From positions 2,542,001 through 2,606,000 of the forward strand of contig NC_092352.1 of the NCBI RefSeq assembly GCF_963676685.1: a stretch of 64,000 nt of DNA, written 5' to 3'. This DNA is from Mytilus edulis. Lineage: Eukaryota. The translations under genes and the position numbers were made by a program. The notes below the pieces were generated by a model, which was not told the origin of the DNA, searched no databases, and was given only the letters and a program-made list of their open reading frames with translations. Below are positions 7,391 to 37,900 of the stretch, piece by piece (the first letter of the stretch is position 1; each line of letters opens with the position of its first letter).

Positions 7391-9223
7391 CTCGATTCAA
7401 AAACAATTAAAAGACAAAATAAACAGCGAGATTGAAGAGCATTGAGGATCAAAATTCCGAAAGGTTTCACCTAATACAGCTTAAGATACAGACAAAAAAA
7501 TGATATTAAATGGCTTGGTAATTTTTTATCACGCAAGGGCTGACAATTCAAAACATTCCAGAAGCACCATGTGTACAAAAGCTGTCATAACTGTGCCCAA
7601 ATTTCAATTGGCTTCACCAATAACGTTCTTCCACATCCAATGGAAGCACTAAGTATTGTAAATATATTATAAGGGCCCAAAAGATTTCGTCCTGAAACCA
7701 AACTTTTTGACTTTTTTCAGTAAAAATCATTTCAAGATTAACGTTTATTCCAAAGATCTTGTTTATCTGGGACTGTATTTTTAAGAAAACATTGTATTTC
7801 AGGTTAATATAAGTTTTTCAATAGTCGACAAACCCACATAAAAAAACAGAACTGGTAGAATATCAACCTGCGTTTACCAAGTTAACATCATATTAGTCAT
7901 ACCTTGGCTTACCCTTGTCGATTCCCTAACTTATCAATAATAACCTGCGTTTACCAAGGCAATATCTTATGTTTAGTTATATATGTTTGTAAAAACCTAG
8001 GTATAATATTATTCAACATATATATCTTACTGTCAGTACTTTATATATAATCACATATGACCGTCTTGTGAGACATAATATCAACCATTATATATGCAGC
8101 AGTTAAAACTAATGGATACCAATATTGCTTTGATAAGATTTCATTGTTTTAATTCATCAAAAGAGAGCTTAGTACTTGACTATAAATGTCTGCATTACTA
8201 AACTGATAAATGTAGTAAGAGATCTGTCGTATTTAACTTTTTCTCCAGTTTTTAAGAGTTGTCTTCTCTTATGAATATAATATATATACGGGAGAACGAC
8301 TGCAAAGTGTAGAGAATCAGAGGGCATTAGTACAAGGGACAATTTTGTTACAATTGACAGTAAGTAAACAATGCTTTGAAAACAAGAAAGAAACAAACAA
8401 CGAATTGTATTTAAGTTGTAATTATTGGTCAAAATATTGATGCTCCGACAAAAGACAGATGTTTACACAAAAACACGTCAAGCTCTTAAATACCCCAAGA
8501 GTTTTATAATAAAATTAACAGATATTATCAAAGTTCGCATCGACATAAAATTCCCAAAACTGAATCATTCAAATATAAATACAGGCAGCCACAAGGGACA
8601 AACATAGCCATGTGGCGAGGTTAAATAACTGCTTTAAGTCTTCAACCCTCGCCCTTTACATGTACTAAAAACTGAAATAACAAAAAGCAACAATAAGTAA
8701 TAAACAAAACATAATCATAATAATTAAGACAATGATTCAAAATTTTCTAATGAATAAATGTATTTTAGCAAGACGGTGTTTATATACATATGTATCTCAA
8801 CTTGTACGATTCGCTCGTGTATGTGACAATGTTTTAGATTTTAACGAGAGAAATTTATGTATTACTGAAAAATTATTACACCAGGGTTTTCGATATCACA
8901 AACTAGTCAAAACATTTACTAAATTTTATCATCGGTATAAGGACATCATTCGTAAATATAGCTCAACATGCAGACTTCTTATACGTTCAGGTATTTCACA
9001 TCCAATTTTTTATGGAAATATTCTTTATAAAGCACAAAGGTGTCAGTATTCACCTCAAAAACTAACAAAACCTTTGAATAGACTTATTAAGAAGGGATAT
9101 AGTTACGATACTGTTGTCAGGTCATTAAAGATTGCATATTTTGGCGTTAATATTGATTATATTATAGGGTCTTTGCATCGGAACTAAACACATTTATTCA
9201 AAAACCAGTTGTTGGCATGACAC

Positions 9224-9318
9224 GGGTTATGTTCTTCTCATATATGTTATGATGGTATGATACTAAACCCCTAACGGGAGGGATTGTGGCTGATGTTCAT
9301 ATGATGAAATCATAATCT
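9224..9318 (+). promoter_or_regulatory. SECIS-like element (type II) in the 3' UTR of the Penelope-like element
   Basis: Hand fold: helix I GGTTATG..TTC..TCATAT / ATATGA..GAA..CATAATC; core ATGAT (9249-9253) / TGAT (9291-9294); 11-position helix II GGTATGATACT / GGGATTGTGGC; AAA 12 nt after ATGA, then a CCC/GGG mini-stem. Confidence 0.7.
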
Positions 9319-9545
9319 TTTAGTCAGTTTAATTGAAGTCTGGAGCTGGCATGTCAGTTAACTGCTAGTTGTCTGTTGTTATTTATGTATTATTGTCATT
9401 TTGTTTATTTTCTTTGGTTACATCTTCTGACATCAGACTCGGACTTCTCTGGAACTGAATTTTAATGTGCGTATTGTTATGCGTTTACTTTTCTACATTG
9501 GCTAGAGGTATAGGGGGAGGGTTGAGATCTCACAAACATGTTTAG

Positions 9546-9950
9546 TTAAGTCTGCCAATTGATATTTTATCGTATGTTTTTCTTTGTTGTGATGTTATGC
9601 TATTGTTTCAGAAAAAGGGAGAAGGTTTGGATCCATTAAAACGTTTAATCCCGCTGCAAATGTTTGCACCTGTCCTAAGTCAGGAATCTGATGTACAGTA
9701 GTTGTCGTTTGTTTATGTAATATATACGTGTTTCTCGTTTCTCGTTTTGTTTATATAGATTAGACCGTTGGTTTTCCCGTTTGAATGGTTTTACACTAGT
9801 AATTTTGGGGCCCTTTATAGCTTGTTGTTCGGTGTGAGCTAAGGCTCCGTGTTGAAGGCCGTACTTTAACCTATAATGGTTTACTTTTTAAATTGTTATT
9901 TGTATGGAGAGTTGTCTCATTGGCACTCACACCACATCTTCCTATATCTA
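9546..9950 (+). mobile_element. Family B dispersed repeat (probable PLE 3'-end derivative) inserted into family A
   Basis: Splits the family A motif CATGTTTAACCCCGC with an apparent TTA duplication. Very similar to 47555-47940. Confidence 0.8.
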
Positions 9951-10522
9951 TTAACCCCGCCGCATTTTTGCGCCTGTCCCAAGTCAGGAGCCTCTGGCCT
10001 TTGTTAGTCTTGTATTATTTTTATTTTAGTTTCTTGTGTACAATTTGGAAATTAGTATGGCGTTCATTATCACTGAACTAGTATATATTTGTTTAGGGGC
10101 CAGTTGAAGGACGCCTCCGGGTGCGGGAATTTCTCGCTACATTGAAGACCTGTTGGTGACCTTCTGCTGTTGTTTTTTCCTATGGTCGGGTTGTTGTCTC
10201 TTTGGCACATTCCCCATTTCCATTCTCAATTTTATGTCGAAAAACTAAAAAAATAGTTTAGTAACGTATAAAATACATCTGTTTTTATAAAATACTTCCA
10301 GAATACGCCGTTTTGTGTTCGACACACATAATATAAACCTAATGCAAAGACTTGAATATGTATTCAGCTGGATACCGCATGTATAGCTAAAAATATTTTA
10401 AAACTCAAAAAGAAAAGTTAGCGGTTTGATGTTATCGGAAACATAGCCCATAGCAAATCATGGACACAGGATCTATATTTTAATGTATTTTGAAGAAGGG
10501 TATTTTTCTAAAGTATAATAAA

Positions 10523-22378: not shown

Positions 22379-23430
22379 TGTTACAGGGAATTTGTGAAAT
22401 CAGGGATTTTGTAAAATCACTGAAATTTCAGGGAATTTGTAAAATCACTGAACTGATTAGTGATTTTATAAAATCCCTGATTTGAACTAGTGATTTTACA
22501 AAATCCCTAAAATAATTAAGATCTCAAGTTTTTTACAGATTCACTGATAAAATTCAGGGAATTTGTAAAATAAATTCATTCACTTTTATAAGAATTTCTG
22601 TAAAAAAATACATTTCAGAGCAAGAGCATCTTGTTGTTGCATGAACATTGATATATAAAAAGCAAACAAGTGTGGTATCATTAAACTTTGCTGTCTACAA
22701 AATAACAATTACATTCACAAAATATATTAAAATAAAAAGTCAATAGAAAATATAGGTAAGAATACTTTGTTTTGTACTGCAAGTTGATGAATAGGTTCTA
22801 ACCAAGCAAAAATGAAAATAGTTTTACTTACTTTGGTCATATATCAGTTACATGTATTCTACCACAAAGTGAAATATCTGTTAATAACAACTTTGACCAA
22901 CCGAGGTCCCAAAGTATCCATTCTAGTTTAAACTCAGCTCTGGGTACCAGAGATGTGTGTGAGAGGGTGATAATTACCCTTCTGATGTACTGATATTTTT
23001 AGCACCCCAAGTGAGAATCGAACTCGGGACCTTCAGCACTGTAGTCATCGGTCTTAACCACAAGACCACGAACTCACATGCATAAATAATTAAATTCACA
23101 GTGGTCTAAATATCTGCTTATATGCCTTTTAGTCATTATCATTATACACTAGTTCTAGCTCACAGTGTTTATTAAACAAACATATTTCAAAATAATAAGT
23201 GATCATTAGTCTATTTTTATATTAAGAAAAACACATTTCTAAAAGCAAGTTATACTTAATTGTAATCAGGGATTTTACAAAAACCCTAGCTCTATTTTCA
23301 GTGATTTTGTAAAATCTCTGACAATTTCAGGGATTCTACAACACCACTGAAACTGTTAGTGAGTTTACAAAATCACTAAAATGTCCAGTGATTTTTACAA
23401 AATCCCTGGTTTTACAAATTCCCTGTAACA
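22379..23430. mobile_element. Non-autonomous TIR (foldback-like) DNA transposon, 1052 bp, in a (TA)n site
   Basis: Termini TGTTACAGGGAATTTGT / ACAAATTCCCTGTAACA. About 200 bp of modular subterminal repeats (AGGGATTTTGTAAAATCACTGA) at each end. TATA on both flanks. Confidence 0.9.
22880..23075 (-). mobile_element. tRNA-derived SINE inside the TIR element
   Basis: Minus-strand head 23075-23004 has an A-box-like TGGTCTTGTGG, D-stem GTCT/AGAC and B-box GTTCGATTC. Acceptor and T stems are broken, so it is not a functional tRNA. Confidence 0.65.
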
Positions 23431-34398: not shown

Positions 34399-36110
34399 AA
34401 TATCAATTGGAAGCAGAACTTCAAACTACTAATAGATTCTGTTGAGGGTTATGCAAAAGACTGGACAAAAAGAGAAAAGGTTGAGGTTGACACTCTTTCG
34501 GAGTTGGTAAAATCAGTAAGGTCATTGATTCAGATAAGAGTAAGTAAGCTTAAAGGGTCAATGAGAACCAAAGCTCCTTCCATCTTTAAAGACCCTCAGG
34601 TCATAGAGGAGTTGTCTTGCCTCCATGACAAATATGTTGTCGTTCCAGCTGACAAAGCCTCAAACAATATTGTTTTTGTTTGCAAGAAACACTACATTGT
34701 CTGCCTGATTAAGGAACTCGGGATAAATAACACACTTGGAAATCCTACATATACACTAAGTACGCTTACTAAGCAGGAGATCCTGGAAAACCACAAATCG
34801 GTTCTAATCTCCTTTGCTGTTCATCCAAAGGATGAAGACCAAGATCTTTCATCCTTATATTGGATTCCTAAGCTTCACAAGAATCTTTATAAGGAAAGGT
34901 ATATTGCAGGTTCTTCCAAGTGTTCCACTAAACCCCTTTAAAGTGCTTACTGTCATACTCACTGCAGTCAAAGAAGGTTTCAGAAATATTCCGAAACGGC
35001 ATATTCAAGAAGTGGTGTTAATCAGATGTGAATACTGAAAAATTCAAAAGAGTTATTAGGGAATTTACTATTTCAATCATTAAAACATTGTACCAACATT
35101 AAAACCTTTGATTTTTCAACTCTTTATACCACTACTCCACAAACTAAACTTAAAGCTCGACTGAAAGAACTCGTCAGCTTATGTTTCTTTAACAAAAAAG
35201 GCACTAGACGTTTTAAATATCTAGTTGTGGGCAGATATTCAGCTTACTTTGTGAAAAATCATACAGAGTCAAAGAAAACATACACAGAAGAGGATATCAT
35301 TGCCATGCTGGACTTTTTAATTGACAACATATTTGTTGAATTTGAAGGTTTGGTCTTCCAACAGACTATTGGAATCCCAATGGGTACCAATTGAGCTCCT
35401 CTACTTGCAGATTTGTTTTTGTATTCCTATGAAGCAGAATGTATCCAAGGGCTTGTACAGAAAGGAGAAAAAAAATTAGCCCAGTCTTTTAATTTCACCT
35501 TTCGGTATATTGATGATGTACTGTCTCTTAATAATAATAGATTCAGTTATCACTTACATTTAATATATCCAAGTGAACTTGAAATTAAAGATAAATCTGC
35601 TTCATATTTAGACCTTTTCCTCGAAATGACTACTGATGGTAGGTTGAATACCAAAATTTATGACAAACGCGATGATTTTAATTTTCCTATAGTTACCTTT
35701 CCATTTCTGTGTAGCAACATCCCAGCGGCACCAGCATATGGAGTATATGTGTCTCATTTGATACGTTACTCTAGAGCTAGCTCAAAGTACGTTGATTTGT
35801 TGAACGAGGAATACTGCTTTCTCAAAAGTTGCTAAGACAGGGCTATGAATCAATCAAATTAGTCTATATATCTTGTAATGATGTATAATATTCATCCAAG
35901 AAATTTTACTGTCGCCATCATGAGCTGATTGGCCATTATGACATAGATCATATCTGATATTCTTCCTCAGTCACAAAAACCTTCCATCATTACCGAACTG
36001 AACAAAGAAAGAACACGACGGGTACCGTATATACGGTGCAGGAAATGCTTACCCTTCCGGAGCACCTGATTTCACTCCCGGGTTTTAGTGGAGTTCGCGT
36101 TGTTTCTTAT
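34399..36110 (+). pseudogene. Decayed 5'-truncated Penelope-like (Naiad-type) reverse transcriptase with structured 3' end
   Basis: Motifs VVVPADKASNN, LYWIPKLHK, TFDFSTLYT, GIPMGTN*APLLADL, FRYIDDVL, YDKRDDFNF and YGVYVSHLIRY, with frameshifts and stops. No C-terminal GIY-YIG. Confidence 0.88.
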
Positions 36111-36511
36111 TTATTATTTATAACTGTTGATGTAAATGTCCTTTGTTTTTTTTAGTCTTTGTTTACTACTTGGTTTTGATTGTTATTGTCTTGCAACCTC
36201 CCGTATAGTCACCCAATCTATAACTTTGCCGATTGGGACATGTTGCCTTAGTGTGGGTTAGCATAACGATTTAGTTCAGGTCTTGCTCCTGGATTCTTGC
36301 GAATGCATCATGTTATTTTTTTTCTACGTTGTTTGGTTTGTTTCTTTTTCGATTTGAACATTGGTAAACTACTATCGTTTTTATTACTTCATAACTTAAA
36401 AAATCAACGTTTTCATGTGTGTTATATTTGTAAAATAAAGACGAAAGATACTAACGGGATAGTCAAACTCATAAGTCGAAAACAAACTGACAATAACATG
36501 GCAAAAAACGA

Positions 36512-37900
36512 AAAGACAAACAACAGTACATACAACACAGCAGGCAAGACAAACAACAGTACATACAACACAGCAAGCAAGACAAACAACAGTACATACA
36601 ACACAGCAGACAAGACAAACAACAGTACATACAACACAGCAGACAAGACAAACAACAGTACATACAACACAGCAGGCAATACAAACAACAGTACATACAA
36701 CACAGCAGACAAGACAAACAACAGTACATACAACACAGCAGACAAGACAAACAACAGTACATACAACACAGCAGACAAGACAAACAACAGTACATACAAC
36801 ACAGCAGGCAAGACAGACATCAGTACATACAACACAGTAGGCAAGACAGACAACAGTACATACAACACAGCAGGAAAGACAGACAACAGTACATAAAACA
36901 CAGCAGGCAAGACAGCCAACAGTACATACAACACAGCAGGCAAGACAAACAACAGTACATACAACACAGCAGGTAAGACAGACAACAGTGCATACAACAC
37001 AGCAGGCAATACAGACAACAGTACATACAACACAGCAGGCAAGACAGACATCAGTACATACAACACAGTAGGCAAGACAGACAACAGTACATACAGCACA
37101 GCAGGCAAGACAAACAACAGTACATACAACACAGCAGGTAAGACAGACAACAGTACATACAACACAGCAGGCAATACAGACAACAGTACATACAACACAG
37201 CAGGCAAGACAAACAACAGTACATACAACACAGCAGACAAGACAGACAACAGTACATACAACACAGCAGGCAATACAAACAACAGTACATACAACACAGC
37301 AGACAAGACAGACATCAGTACATACAACACAGCAGACAAGACAAACAACAGTACATACAACACAGCAGACAAGACAGACAACAGTACATACAACACAGCA
37401 GGCAATACAAACAACAGTACATACAACACAGCAGGCAAGACAGACATCAGTACATACAACACAGTAGGCAAGACAGACAACAGTACATACAACACAGCAG
37501 GCAAGACAAACAACAGTACATACAACACAGCAGGTAAGACAAACAACAGTACATACAACACAGCAGACAAGACAGACAACAGTACATACAACACAGCAGG
37601 CAATACAAACAACAGTACATACAACACAGCAGGCAAGACAGACATCAGTACATACAACACAGTAGGCAAGACAGACAACAGTACATACAACACAGAAGGC
37701 AAGACAAACAACAGTACATACAACACAGCAGGTAAGACAGACAACAGTACATACAACACAGCAGGCAATACAGACAACAGTACATACAACACAGCAGGCA
37801 AGACAGACATCAGTACATACAACACAGTAGGCAAGACAGAAAACAGTACATACAACACAGCAGGCAAGACAAACAACAGTACATACAACACAGCAGTCAA
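36512..37900. repeat. Minisatellite, about 42 x 33 bp
   Basis: Unit AAGACA(A/G)ACAACAGTACATACAACACAGCAGGC, growing out of a family C fragment at 36438-36530. Confidence 0.97.

What the first reader, a model, noticed from the sequence alone, without database searches (positions are those of the whole stretch)
9187..9318. SECIS-like element directly downstream of a Penelope-like (Naiad) RT ORF: candidate selenoprotein-encoding retrotransposon
Seen: about 60 nt after the stop is ATGAT-GGTATGATACT-AAA-CCC-CTAAC-GGG-A-GGGATTGTGGC-TGAT, closed by a long lower helix. This has the UGAN/NGAN quartet, AAA 12 nt after AUGA and an apical mini-stem, i.e. type II SECIS geometry, with two mismatches in helix II. 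Known: some Naiad PLEs in spiders and clams encode multi-selenocysteine proteins. Inference: this family has in-frame UGA codons in its missing 5' part, which would tie retrotransposition to selenium supply. The surviving ~135 codons contain no UGA.
Basis: partly seen in the sequence, partly recalled or inferred. Interest (0 to 1): 0.9.

Follow-up and report, generated by a model that had tools for sequence, protein, structure and literature searches.

The report
Dead copy of selenocysteine-coding Naiad retrotransposon
This stretch is the broken-off tail of a very abundant jumping gene (a Naiad-type Penelope-like retrotransposon) whose longer sister copies need four UGA "stop" codons read as selenocysteine, helped by the SECIS hairpin seen here; such elements were first reported in clams and spiders in 2021, so this adds a family and host, not a new principle.

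Summary
AUGA (9249-9252), AAA (9265-9267), a 3-bp apical mini-stem and UGAU (9291-9294) lie 61 nt after the TAA stop (9185-9187). Rfam SECIS_1 aligns 9239-9303 end to end, but at only 22.5 bits (gathering score 35).

The window copy is a dead, 5'-truncated copy (8789-9544 plus 9951-10235, split by a nested insertion) of a young family with tens of thousands of copies. It has two private SECIS changes. One, C>G at 9289, breaks a helix II pair. The commonest family version scores 32.3 bits, and one natural variant scores 39.7.

Longer copies hold a 1,004-codon GIY-YIG + RT frame. Its only in-frame stops are four TGAs (codons 55, 86, 97, 522), present in 29-34 of 30-34 copies. They sit at zinc-finger, GIY-YIG and DKA+8 cysteine positions, and two align directly with Cys in relatives.

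Variants shared between copies are mostly synonymous (16 N : 36 S, against 599 : 217 for singletons, p = 7.5e-10), both before and after the fourth TGA. A second family keeps the SECIS core with four compensatory helix II pairs. The host has tRNA-Sec genes.

Sec insertion itself is untested. The kind is published (PMC8557442), and this scan has already reported the same family on other windows of this genome.

The parts
8789..9187 (+). Last 132 codons plus the TAA stop of the Naiad EN-RT ORF (C-terminal RT/thumb region). The 5'-truncation point of this copy is about 8775-8789.
   Evidence: blastn to 29 sister copies starts at 8789. The same tail gave 32,987 first-look candidates in the genome, and all 150 that were scored are 94-100% identical. 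It aligns to the end of the 1,004-codon frame of L035.
9188..9238 (+). Spacer between the stop codon and the SECIS.
9239..9303 (+). SECIS-like hairpin with type II geometry. AUGA 9249-9252; helix II 9254-9263 with 9281-9290; AAA 9265-9267; mini-stem 9269-9271 with 9276-9278; UGAU 9291-9294. Private changes are A>G at 9280 and C>G at 9289; the second breaks a G-C pair next to the quartet.
   Evidence: RF00031 scores 22.5 bits here, 32.3 for the commonest family version and 39.7 for the L030 variant. Copy table. Folds. Compensatory pairs against a second family.
9304..9544 (+). 3' UTR of the element, first part.
   Evidence: 96-98% identical to sister copies
9545..9950 (+). Nested insertion private to this copy, not part of the family unit. 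It is flanked by a 3-bp TTA duplication and looks like the truncated tail of a related repeat.
   Evidence: Absent from all 29 sister copies. Their alignments overlap by 3 nt at the junction.
9951..10235 (+). 3' UTR and tail of the element, second part, up to the 3' end of the unit. It begins with a twister-like core motif that the nested insertion splits from its first bases (9539-9544).
   Evidence: 95-98% identical to sister copies. Sub-threshold twister-P1 match on an uninterrupted copy, L031:5751-5810, 18.3 bits against a gathering score of 67.

Best explanation
Window 8789-10235 is a dead, 5'-truncated insertion of a young, very high-copy Naiad-clade Penelope-like retrotransposon, and it also carries a nested insertion.

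The full unit is about 4.03 kb. It consists of a roughly 0.37-kb 5' UTR, one 1,004-codon ORF (N-terminal zinc-finger/GIY-YIG endonuclease, linker, TERT-like RT) and a roughly 0.65-kb 3' UTR.

The ORF holds four in-frame UGA codons in place of conserved cysteines:
- codon 55, the second Cys of CX4CxxC;
- codon 86, the Cys before the GIY motif;
- codon 97, the first Cys of the CCHH finger;
- codon 522, the Cys 8 residues after DKA.

The inferred mechanism is as follows. The SECIS hairpin starts 52 nt after the stop. On the element's mRNA it recruits the host SBP2/eEFSec/tRNA-Sec machinery, so all four UGAs are read as selenocysteine and a full-length EN-RT protein is made. Without recoding, only a 54-residue peptide would result.

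Shown here: the element's anatomy, near-fixation of the TGAs, Cys homology for two sites, purifying selection on coding sequence on both sides of the fourth UGA, the SECIS core kept with compensatory changes across two families, and host tRNA-Sec genes.

Inferred, not shown: actual Sec insertion, and any dependence of transposition on selenium.

The copy in this window has lost all UGAs and its start codon, and one helix II pair of its SECIS is broken. It does nothing as a selenoprotein gene.
For: Family and anatomy:
- The window copy matches sister copies at 95-99% over 8789-9544 and 9951-10235.
- The 132-aa tail gave 32,987 first-look candidates.
- Head-to-tail pairs have a period of 4,031 bp.
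- The ATG (MKLRNGKIL) lies 27 nt upstream of L035's 5' end in 23 of 29 copies.
- The L035 frame shows C-HAKK-U-LT-C, DIT-U, IIYLLT-U-NKPAGCGIQYVGET, HLKKHNH, a KR-rich block, CNC, GPKY, ADKAANNIIVV-U, and the RT motifs FDFSTLYTTLPH, PMGTNCAP and RYLDDIL.
- The 17 best PDB fold matches of the RT piece are all telomerase RTs, though weak: best E 1e-3, TM 0.25-0.37.

TGA codons:
- They are TGA in 30/30, 29/30, 29/30 and 34/34 copies.
- 73 of 74 RT-region copies carry a TGA when aligned to the Cys-bearing relative P0155 (…NNIIVVCRKYYIEVL). In 56 of the 74 it is the only stop in 587 codons.
- In 95 of 98 matches that begin at Cys3 of P0162, the one stop is a TGA at that first codon.
- A 38%-identical copy in this same window has Cys at DKA+8.
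- Four of 29 sampled copies have no stop other than the four TGAs in their first 705 codons.

Selection:
- Variants shared by at least 3 copies are 16 nonsynonymous: 36 synonymous. Singletons are 599: 217. Fisher p = 7.5e-10.
- The effect holds separately before (p = 1.3e-5) and after (p = 2.4e-5) the fourth TGA.

SECIS:
- Scores are 32.3 bits for the commonest version and 39.7 (above the gathering score) for a one-substitution variant.
- The minimum-energy fold of the commonest version is the SECIS shape.
- A second family (47-54% identical tail) has a 26-27-bit SECIS about 100 nt after its stop. AUGA, AAA and UGAU are invariant, four helix II pairs changed on both sides, and 92% of cells pair against 33-45% when the partner is slid.
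- In about 370 kb scanned, SECIS hits occur only at these 3' UTR positions.

Host and literature:
- The host has five tRNA-Sec hits at 77-80 bits.
- The four published Sec-Naiads have UGA at the Cys before GIY-YIG and at DKA+8. The clam ones also have it at the first CCHH Cys (PMC8557442).
Against: - No experiment shows Sec insertion.
- The commonest SECIS scores 32.3 bits, just under Rfam's gathering score of 35, and has one A.G mismatch in helix II. SECISearch3 could not be run.
- Cys homology of the first two TGAs rests on reading motifs against the paper's description, not on an alignment made here.
- The compensatory evidence comes from only two families, and the second is known from two tail fragments whose ORF state is unknown.
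- RNA reads cover the element on both strands with depth following the copy-number gradient, so they do not show a dedicated transcript.
- Pfam finds no RVT or GIY-YIG domain in the pieces, and the endonuclease model was too poor to search (pLDDT 49).
- A Cys codon can become a stop only as TGA, so the codon type alone is not informative. The positions and the absence of other stops carry the weight.
Confidence: 0.8

Rival explanations
1. The TGAs are true nonsense mutations in a non-autonomous lineage that is copied in trans by a Cys-coding Naiad. On this view the SECIS-like hairpin is a chance look-alike.
For: PLEs and other retroelements can be mobilised in trans. Cys-coding relatives exist: P0155, P0156 and P0172, and a Cys-type fragment in this window. 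The SECIS score is under Rfam's gathering score. A Cys codon can become a stop only as TGA.
Against: All four stops fall on conserved zinc-finger, GIY-YIG and DKA+8 cysteines, and none falls elsewhere in 1,004 codons. The sites match those of published Sec-Naiads. Shared variants are strongly biased to synonymous on both sides of the fourth TGA, which a frame that is never translated would not show. The SECIS core is kept with compensatory changes in a second family. Predicted proteins from 12 of 22 related database clusters, down to 37% identity, end exactly at DKA+7. The best 74 genome matches to P0155 are all the TGA family at about 80% identity, so no closer Cys-type helper showed up.
Confidence: 0.07
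2. The UGAs are read through, but not as selenocysteine. Near-cognate Cys or Trp insertion, or programmed read-through, would do it, and the hairpin would have another role or none.
For: Selection on downstream coding sequence shows translation past the UGAs, not the residue that is inserted. Four database clusters show Trp at DKA+8.
Against: Four successive low-efficiency read-throughs would give very little full-length protein. A SECIS of the right geometry sits in the 3' UTR and is kept across families. Replacement of Cys by UGA is the usual signature of Sec. The host has the Sec machinery.
Confidence: 0.08
3. The hairpin in this window copy has been taken over by a neighbouring host gene as its SECIS.
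For: The 2021 paper raises this route for 5'-truncated Sec-Naiad copies. The genome holds tens of thousands of such tails.
Against: This copy has a broken helix II pair and scores 22.5 bits. No long ORF lies upstream on the + strand. A nested insertion follows it. Nothing here points to a host selenoprotein gene.
Confidence: 0.03

Closest known systems
Selenoprotein-coding Naiad PLEs of clams (Naiad_Scon, Naiad_Mmer; Craig et al. 2021, PMC8557442)
   Same: N-terminal GIY-YIG endonuclease plus RT in one ORF. UGA at the Cys before GIY-YIG, at the first Cys of the CCHH finger and at the Cys 8 residues after DKA. SECIS in the 3' UTR. Bivalve host, high copy number, partial tandems and 5' truncation.
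   Different: This family has a fourth UGA at the second Cys of the CX2-5CxxC finger, a site reported only in the spider family Naiad_Sdum, and none in RT6. Its SECIS has type II geometry (apical mini-stem) and starts 52 nt after the stop. The published ones are type I and lie 1-21 nt after the stop. The paper does not list a selenoprotein family from mussels. No sequence comparison with the published families was possible because no supplement is held.
Selenoprotein-coding Naiad PLEs of spiders (Naiad_Smim, Naiad_Sdum)
   Same: Three or four UGAs at conserved cysteines, including the CX2-5CxxC finger, the Cys before GIY-YIG and DKA+8.
   Different: The spider families lack the UGA at the first CCHH Cys. 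According to the paper, chelicerate Naiads lack the IFD. The host phylum differs.
Cys-coding Naiads (database proteins P0155, P0156, P0172; the fragment at window 34402-35817)
   Same: 70-80% (P0155, P0156) or 38% (window fragment) protein identity. Same DKA, RT and C-terminal tail motifs.
   Different: Cys, not UGA, at DKA+8. No SECIS hit was found downstream of the window's Cys-type fragment, but that is a single decayed copy.
Eukaryotic SECIS elements of cellular selenoprotein mRNAs (Rfam RF00031)
   Same: AUGA/UGAU quartet, 10-bp helix II, unpaired AAA 12 nt after AUGA, apical mini-stem, 3' UTR position.
   Different: It sits in a retrotransposon and is present in tens of thousands of genomic copies. 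It scores slightly under the curated threshold.

Membership tests
Naiad clade of Penelope-like elements | GIY-YIG endonuclease with CCHH and CX2-5CxxC fingers placed N-terminal to the RT | tested here: met
   Motifs read in the L035 frame: C-HAKK-U-LT-C; IIY…U…C…YVGET…R…H…E…N; HLKKHNH, all upstream of the RT. The structural test failed (model pLDDT 49) and Pfam was silent, so this rests on motifs.
Naiad clade of Penelope-like elements | Linker with a KR-rich block, CxC motif and GxKF/Y motif; DKG changed to DKA | tested here: met
   KTRSHGRRTNRNQRKFR, SCNCS, KGPKYR and VPADKAANN, in that order. DKA is seen in all 22 related clusters. The definition comes from PMC8557442.
Naiad clade of Penelope-like elements | RT related to telomerase RT | tested here: met
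   AlphaFold model of the 482-aa piece has pLDDT 68. The 17 best Foldseek PDB hits are all TERT, best E 1e-3, TM 0.25-0.37. Weak but consistent.
Naiad clade of Penelope-like elements | IFD insertion between RT3(A) and RT4(B) | not tested
   No alignment with canonical PLEs or TERT was made.
Naiad clade of Penelope-like elements | Frequent 5' truncation, partial tandems (pLTR), unit 3.4-4.4 kb, no canonical hammerhead | tested here: met
   The window copy is truncated at about 8789. Upstream partial copies precede full copies. Tandem period is 4,031 bp. No hammerhead hit lies inside the unit.
Eukaryotic SECIS (RF00031) | AUGA…GA quartet, AAR 11-12 nt downstream, helix II, apical loop or mini-stem | tested here: met
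   Full-length alignment to the model, positions 1-64. The window copy has two helix II mismatches and the commonest family version has one.
Eukaryotic SECIS (RF00031) | Score at or above the curated gathering threshold (35 bits) | tested here: not met
   Window copy 22.5 bits; commonest family version 32.3; L008 33.6; only the L030 variant reaches 39.7. The threshold is conservative and the family sits just under it. For the window copy alone the test clearly fails.
Eukaryotic SECIS (RF00031) | Structure kept by compensatory change in relatives | tested here: met
   Against a second family: four pairs changed on both sides, two on one side, 92% of cells paired against 33-45% in slid controls. 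Only two lineages were compared.
Eukaryotic SECIS (RF00031) | Binds SBP2 and directs Sec insertion | not testable with these tools
   Needs a reporter or binding assay.
Selenoprotein gene | In-frame UGA aligned with Cys in homologues | tested here: met
   Codon 522 aligns with Cys in P0155, P0156 and P0172 and in the window's Cys-type copy. Codon 97 aligns with Cys3 of P0162. Codons 55 and 86 are placed by motif position only.
Selenoprotein gene | Coding constraint continues downstream of the UGA | tested here: met
   Shared against singleton variants: N:S of 12:21 against 326:114 after the fourth TGA, p = 2.4e-5. Overall 16:36 against 599:217, p = 7.5e-10.
Selenoprotein gene | Host has the Sec machinery | tested here: met
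   Five tRNA-Sec hits at 77-80 bits. One cellular-type SECIS at 41.4 bits.
Selenoprotein gene | Sec detected in the protein | not testable with these tools
   Needs 75Se labelling or mass spectrometry.

The most novel reading that the evidence does not exclude
Selenocysteine coding may be the common state of a large branch of bivalve-type Naiads, not a rarity of four families. Predicted proteins from 12 of 22 related database clusters, down to 37% identity, stop exactly at DKA+7.

The tens of thousands of 5'-truncated tails would then scatter near-functional SECIS hairpins through the genome. Such hairpins could hand host genes a ready-made SECIS, and they would make the element's own spread depend on selenium supply and on the host's ranking of selenoprotein synthesis.
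Probability: 0.15. Interest if true: 0.75.

Novelty: new member of a known kind. Interest (0 to 1): 0.42.

Why it matters
Selenoprotein-coding transposons are known from only four families, described in one 2021 paper. This family adds another bivalve host lineage and a new combination of four Sec sites. It also adds a type II SECIS and a very high copy number.

It gives population-style evidence that the frame is under selection on both sides of a UGA. No such test appears in the parts of the paper read here.

In practice, ordinary gene and repeat annotation will cut this ORF into pieces at the TGAs. SECIS scans of this genome will be swamped by tens of thousands of transposon tails.

The local copy itself has no function.

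Tried and rejected
Searches that were silent or weak:
- Pfam on the ORF tail and on three longer pieces gave no RVT or GIY-YIG hit.
- A sequence search of the PDB with the RT piece gave nothing meaningful.
- The endonuclease structure model was too poor to search.
- The thermodynamic fold of the window hairpin alone is no better than shuffles.
- A genome-wide RF00031 search scored only 130 of about 47,000 candidates and reported one cellular-type hit, so it gave no census.

RNA evidence:
- Two RNA-seq runs and two metatranscriptome assemblies cover the element.
- Coverage is on both strands and depth follows the 3'-biased copy number, so this is no evidence for a dedicated mRNA.
- In the rows shown, no difference is listed at the TGA sites.

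Shared variants in the SECIS:
- None fall in its 65 nt, but only about one was expected, so the test has no power.

A misreading I corrected:
- I first took the common alignment start at 8789 to be a family-wide 5' end.
- It is only this copy's truncation point.

Tools that stopped:
I could not fetch 20 complete copies or more of the second family.
The stop codon type and 3' UTRs of the 12 database clusters that end at DKA+7 could not be checked.
- The search for homologous proteins timed out once.
- The paper's supplements are not held.

Steps not taken:
- SECISearch3 is not available here.

Full report
**What is at the coordinates**

The quoted letters are all present. The stop TAA is at 9185-9187 and AUGA follows at 9249-9252, 61 nt later. 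The other features are:
- helix II: 9254-9263 paired with 9281-9290;
- unpaired AAA: 9265-9267, 12 nt after AUGA;
- a 3-bp mini-stem: CCC 9269-9271 with GGG 9276-9278;
- UGAU: 9291-9294;
- a lower helix: 9239-9243 with 9299-9303, extendable.

Rfam's SECIS_1 model aligns 9239-9303 from its first to its last position. It marks two non-standard pairs in helix II.

The score is only 22.5 bits against a gathering score of 35. E is 0.14 in 1.1 kb. In a scan of the whole 64-kb window the hit does not reach E<=1. The stretch folds no better than shuffled sequence.

**What the stretch belongs to**

Window 8789-9544 plus 9951-10235 matches many places in the genome at 95-99%. The 132-codon tail alone gave 32,987 first-look candidates.

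The 406 bases at 9545-9950 are absent from all 29 sister copies examined. They are flanked by a 3-bp TTA duplication, so they are a nested insertion. The common alignment start at 8789 is the truncation point of this copy, not a family boundary.

**Longer copies**

Twelve longer copies and 29 copies sampled at the 5' end were fetched.

In L035 the frame that ends at the same TAA stays open for 1,012 codons apart from four TGAs. L035 lacks only the first nine codons. In 23 of 29 copies an ATG (MKLRNGKIL) lies 27 nt upstream of L035's 5' end. This gives a 1,004-codon ORF with TGA at codons 55, 86, 97 and 522.

The 5' UTR is about 0.37 kb and the 3' UTR about 0.65 kb. Head-to-tail pairs lie 4,031 bp apart. 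Partial copies often precede full ones.

**Identity of the protein**

Read directly, the frame shows these motifs in order:
- C-HAKK-U-LT-C;
- DIT-U;
- IIYLLT-U-NKPAGCGIQYVGET, with later R, H, E and N residues and HLKKHNH;
- a KR-rich block;
- CNC;
- GPKY;
- ADKAANNIIVV-U;
- RT motifs FDFSTLYTTLPH, PMGTNCAP and RYLDDIL.

This order and these motifs are the ones that Craig et al. 2021 give as diagnostic of the Naiad clade (PMC8557442).

Pfam is silent on the pieces. An AlphaFold model of the 482-residue piece after the fourth TGA has pLDDT 68. Its 17 best PDB matches are all telomerase RTs, with weak scores. The endonuclease model was too poor to use.

**Are the TGAs fixed, and do they stand for cysteine?**

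Across the copies in hand the four codons are TGA in 30/30, 29/30, 29/30 and 34/34.

For codon 522:
- Three database relatives at 70-80% identity read ADKAANNII(V/I)V-C-RK at the fourth site.
- Searching the genome with one of them (P0155) gave 74 scored copies. 73 carry a TGA, and in 56 it is the only stop in 587 codons.
- A 38%-identical Naiad fragment elsewhere in this window (34402-35817) has Cys at the same place.

For codon 97:
- The relative P0162 begins M-T-C-KAKNCGIQYVGQT.
- 95 of 98 genome matches that start at its Cys3 hold exactly one stop, a TGA, at that first codon.

For codons 55 and 86:
- These are placed by motif position only: the second Cys of CX4CxxC and the Cys before the GIY motif.

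The paper reports UGA at the Cys before GIY-YIG and at DKA+8 in all four Sec-Naiads. It reports the first CCHH Cys in the clam families and the CX2-5CxxC cysteines in the spider families. This family therefore has the clam set plus one spider-type site.

**Is the frame used beyond the TGAs?**

Copies decay neutrally after insertion. Differences shared by several copies mostly arose in the active lineages. I used L035, a real copy, as the coordinate frame and built no consensus.

| Variant class | Nonsynonymous | Synonymous |
|---|---|---|
| Singletons | 599 | 217 |
| Shared by >=3 copies and >=10% of copies | 16 | 36 |

Fisher's exact test gives p = 7.5e-10 (after removing a duplicated locus). 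The effect holds separately before the fourth TGA (6:17 against 267:103, p = 1.3e-5) and after it (12:21 against 326:114, p = 2.4e-5). The coding sequence downstream of in-frame TGAs has therefore been under purifying selection while the TGAs stayed fixed.

**The SECIS at family level**

- Of 47 sister copies, 20 share one sequence.
- That sequence scores 32.3 bits (E 0.009 in 33 kb).
- Its minimum-energy fold is the SECIS shape.
- It has one A.G mismatch in helix II. A natural G>U variant in L030 repairs it and scores 39.7, above the gathering score.
- The window copy differs by A>G at 9280 and C>G at 9289. The second change breaks the G-C pair next to the quartet and explains the drop to 22.5 bits.

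A second family is seen as two tail fragments. Its tail protein is 47-54% identical and resembles database protein P0003. It has a 26-27-bit SECIS about 100 nt after its stop. Aligned with the first family:
- UUAUGA, CUAAA and UGAU are invariant;
- four helix II pairs changed on both sides and two on one side;
- 92% of cells pair, against 33-45% when the 3' partner is slid by 1-3 columns.

Only two lineages are compared, so this is supportive and not conclusive.

In about 370 kb of window and loci scanned, SECIS hits occur only at these 3' UTR positions. No hit follows the window's Cys-type fragment.

**Host machinery and expression**

The genome has five tRNA-Sec hits at 77-80 bits. It also has a cellular-type SECIS at 41.4 bits.

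RNA reads from two RNA-seq runs and two metatranscriptome assemblies cover the element. They do so on both strands, with depth following the 3'-biased copy number. This does not show a dedicated transcript.

**Wider relatives**

Of 22 database clusters found with the region around DKA, at 37-98% identity:
- 12 predicted proteins end exactly at DKA+7;
- 6 have Cys at DKA+8;
- 4 have Trp at DKA+8.

The stop type in these clusters is therefore unknown.

**Verdict**

This is a Naiad Penelope-like retrotransposon whose ORF needs four UGAs recoded, and it carries its own SECIS.

The copy in the window is a fossil. It is 5'-truncated, has no UGA or start codon, has a damaged helix II, and is interrupted by a nested insertion.

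Actual Sec insertion, and any link between transposition and selenium, remain untested.

The kind was published in 2021 for clams and spiders. The held literature has no later report and none for mussels. Earlier notes of this scan describe the same family on other windows of this genome. I read them only after reaching these conclusions.

- One protein search timed out.
- No family consensus was built, because of the tools' standing bar on consensus sequences for proviral-like stretches. Counts on real copies were used instead.

Noticed in passing
window 9545-9950: Nested insertion private to this copy, flanked by a 3-bp TTA duplication (9542-9544 and 9951-9953). It resembles the truncated tail of a related repeat (72-84% to pieces in L030, L013, L022, L020). 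It carries its own twister-like motif at 9642-9704 (twister-P1, 14.4 bits, gathering score 67).
   Followed up: partly
L031:5751-5810; in the window split as 9539-9544 + 9954-~10007: The family's 3' tail holds a twister-ribozyme-like core (UGUUUAACCCCGCC…GCCUGUCCCAAGUCAGG). It scores only 18.3 bits against twister-P1 (gathering score 67.2, E 0.41 in 581 nt). Earlier notes of this scan call it a twister fold. Here it has only this weak Rfam support.
   Followed up: partly
window 34402-35817 (+): Decayed fragment of a distant Naiad family (38% identity over 480 residues, three in-frame stops). It has Cys, not TGA, 8 residues after DKA. No SECIS hit lies in 35500-37500.
   Followed up: partly
database proteins P0152-P0171: Of 22 related protein clusters, 12 end exactly at DKA+7, 6 have Cys and 4 have Trp at DKA+8. 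Sec-type Naiads may be much more common than the four published families. The Trp could be a TGA that the gene caller read under another genetic code.
   Followed up: partly
L019:440-483 and 791-834: Two type I hammerhead ribozyme matches (30.9 and 27.2 bits, gathering score 34), 351 bp apart, in the flank of a sister copy. They look like a tandem retrozyme- or Penelope-type repeat.
   Followed up: no
G000:C7:74815896-75374462 and C1:49149863; C10:14401393-14442259: Five tRNA-Sec genes over the cut-off, four of them scoring identically within 560 kb on one contig. Also a tandem array of at least 45 tRNA-like genes with an 895-bp period, just under the tRNA-Sec cut-off (45.9 bits).
   Followed up: no
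G000, e.g. C4:62934945/62938976; C6:88905078/88908168/88911258: Many head-to-tail pairs of the element with a 4,031-bp period, and one triple with a 3,090-bp period (an internally deleted unit?).
   Followed up: no
window 22393-22487: A near-perfect hairpin that matches a microRNA precursor model weakly on both strands (mir-384, 29-31 bits, gathering score 72). Probably a small inverted-repeat element.
   Followed up: no
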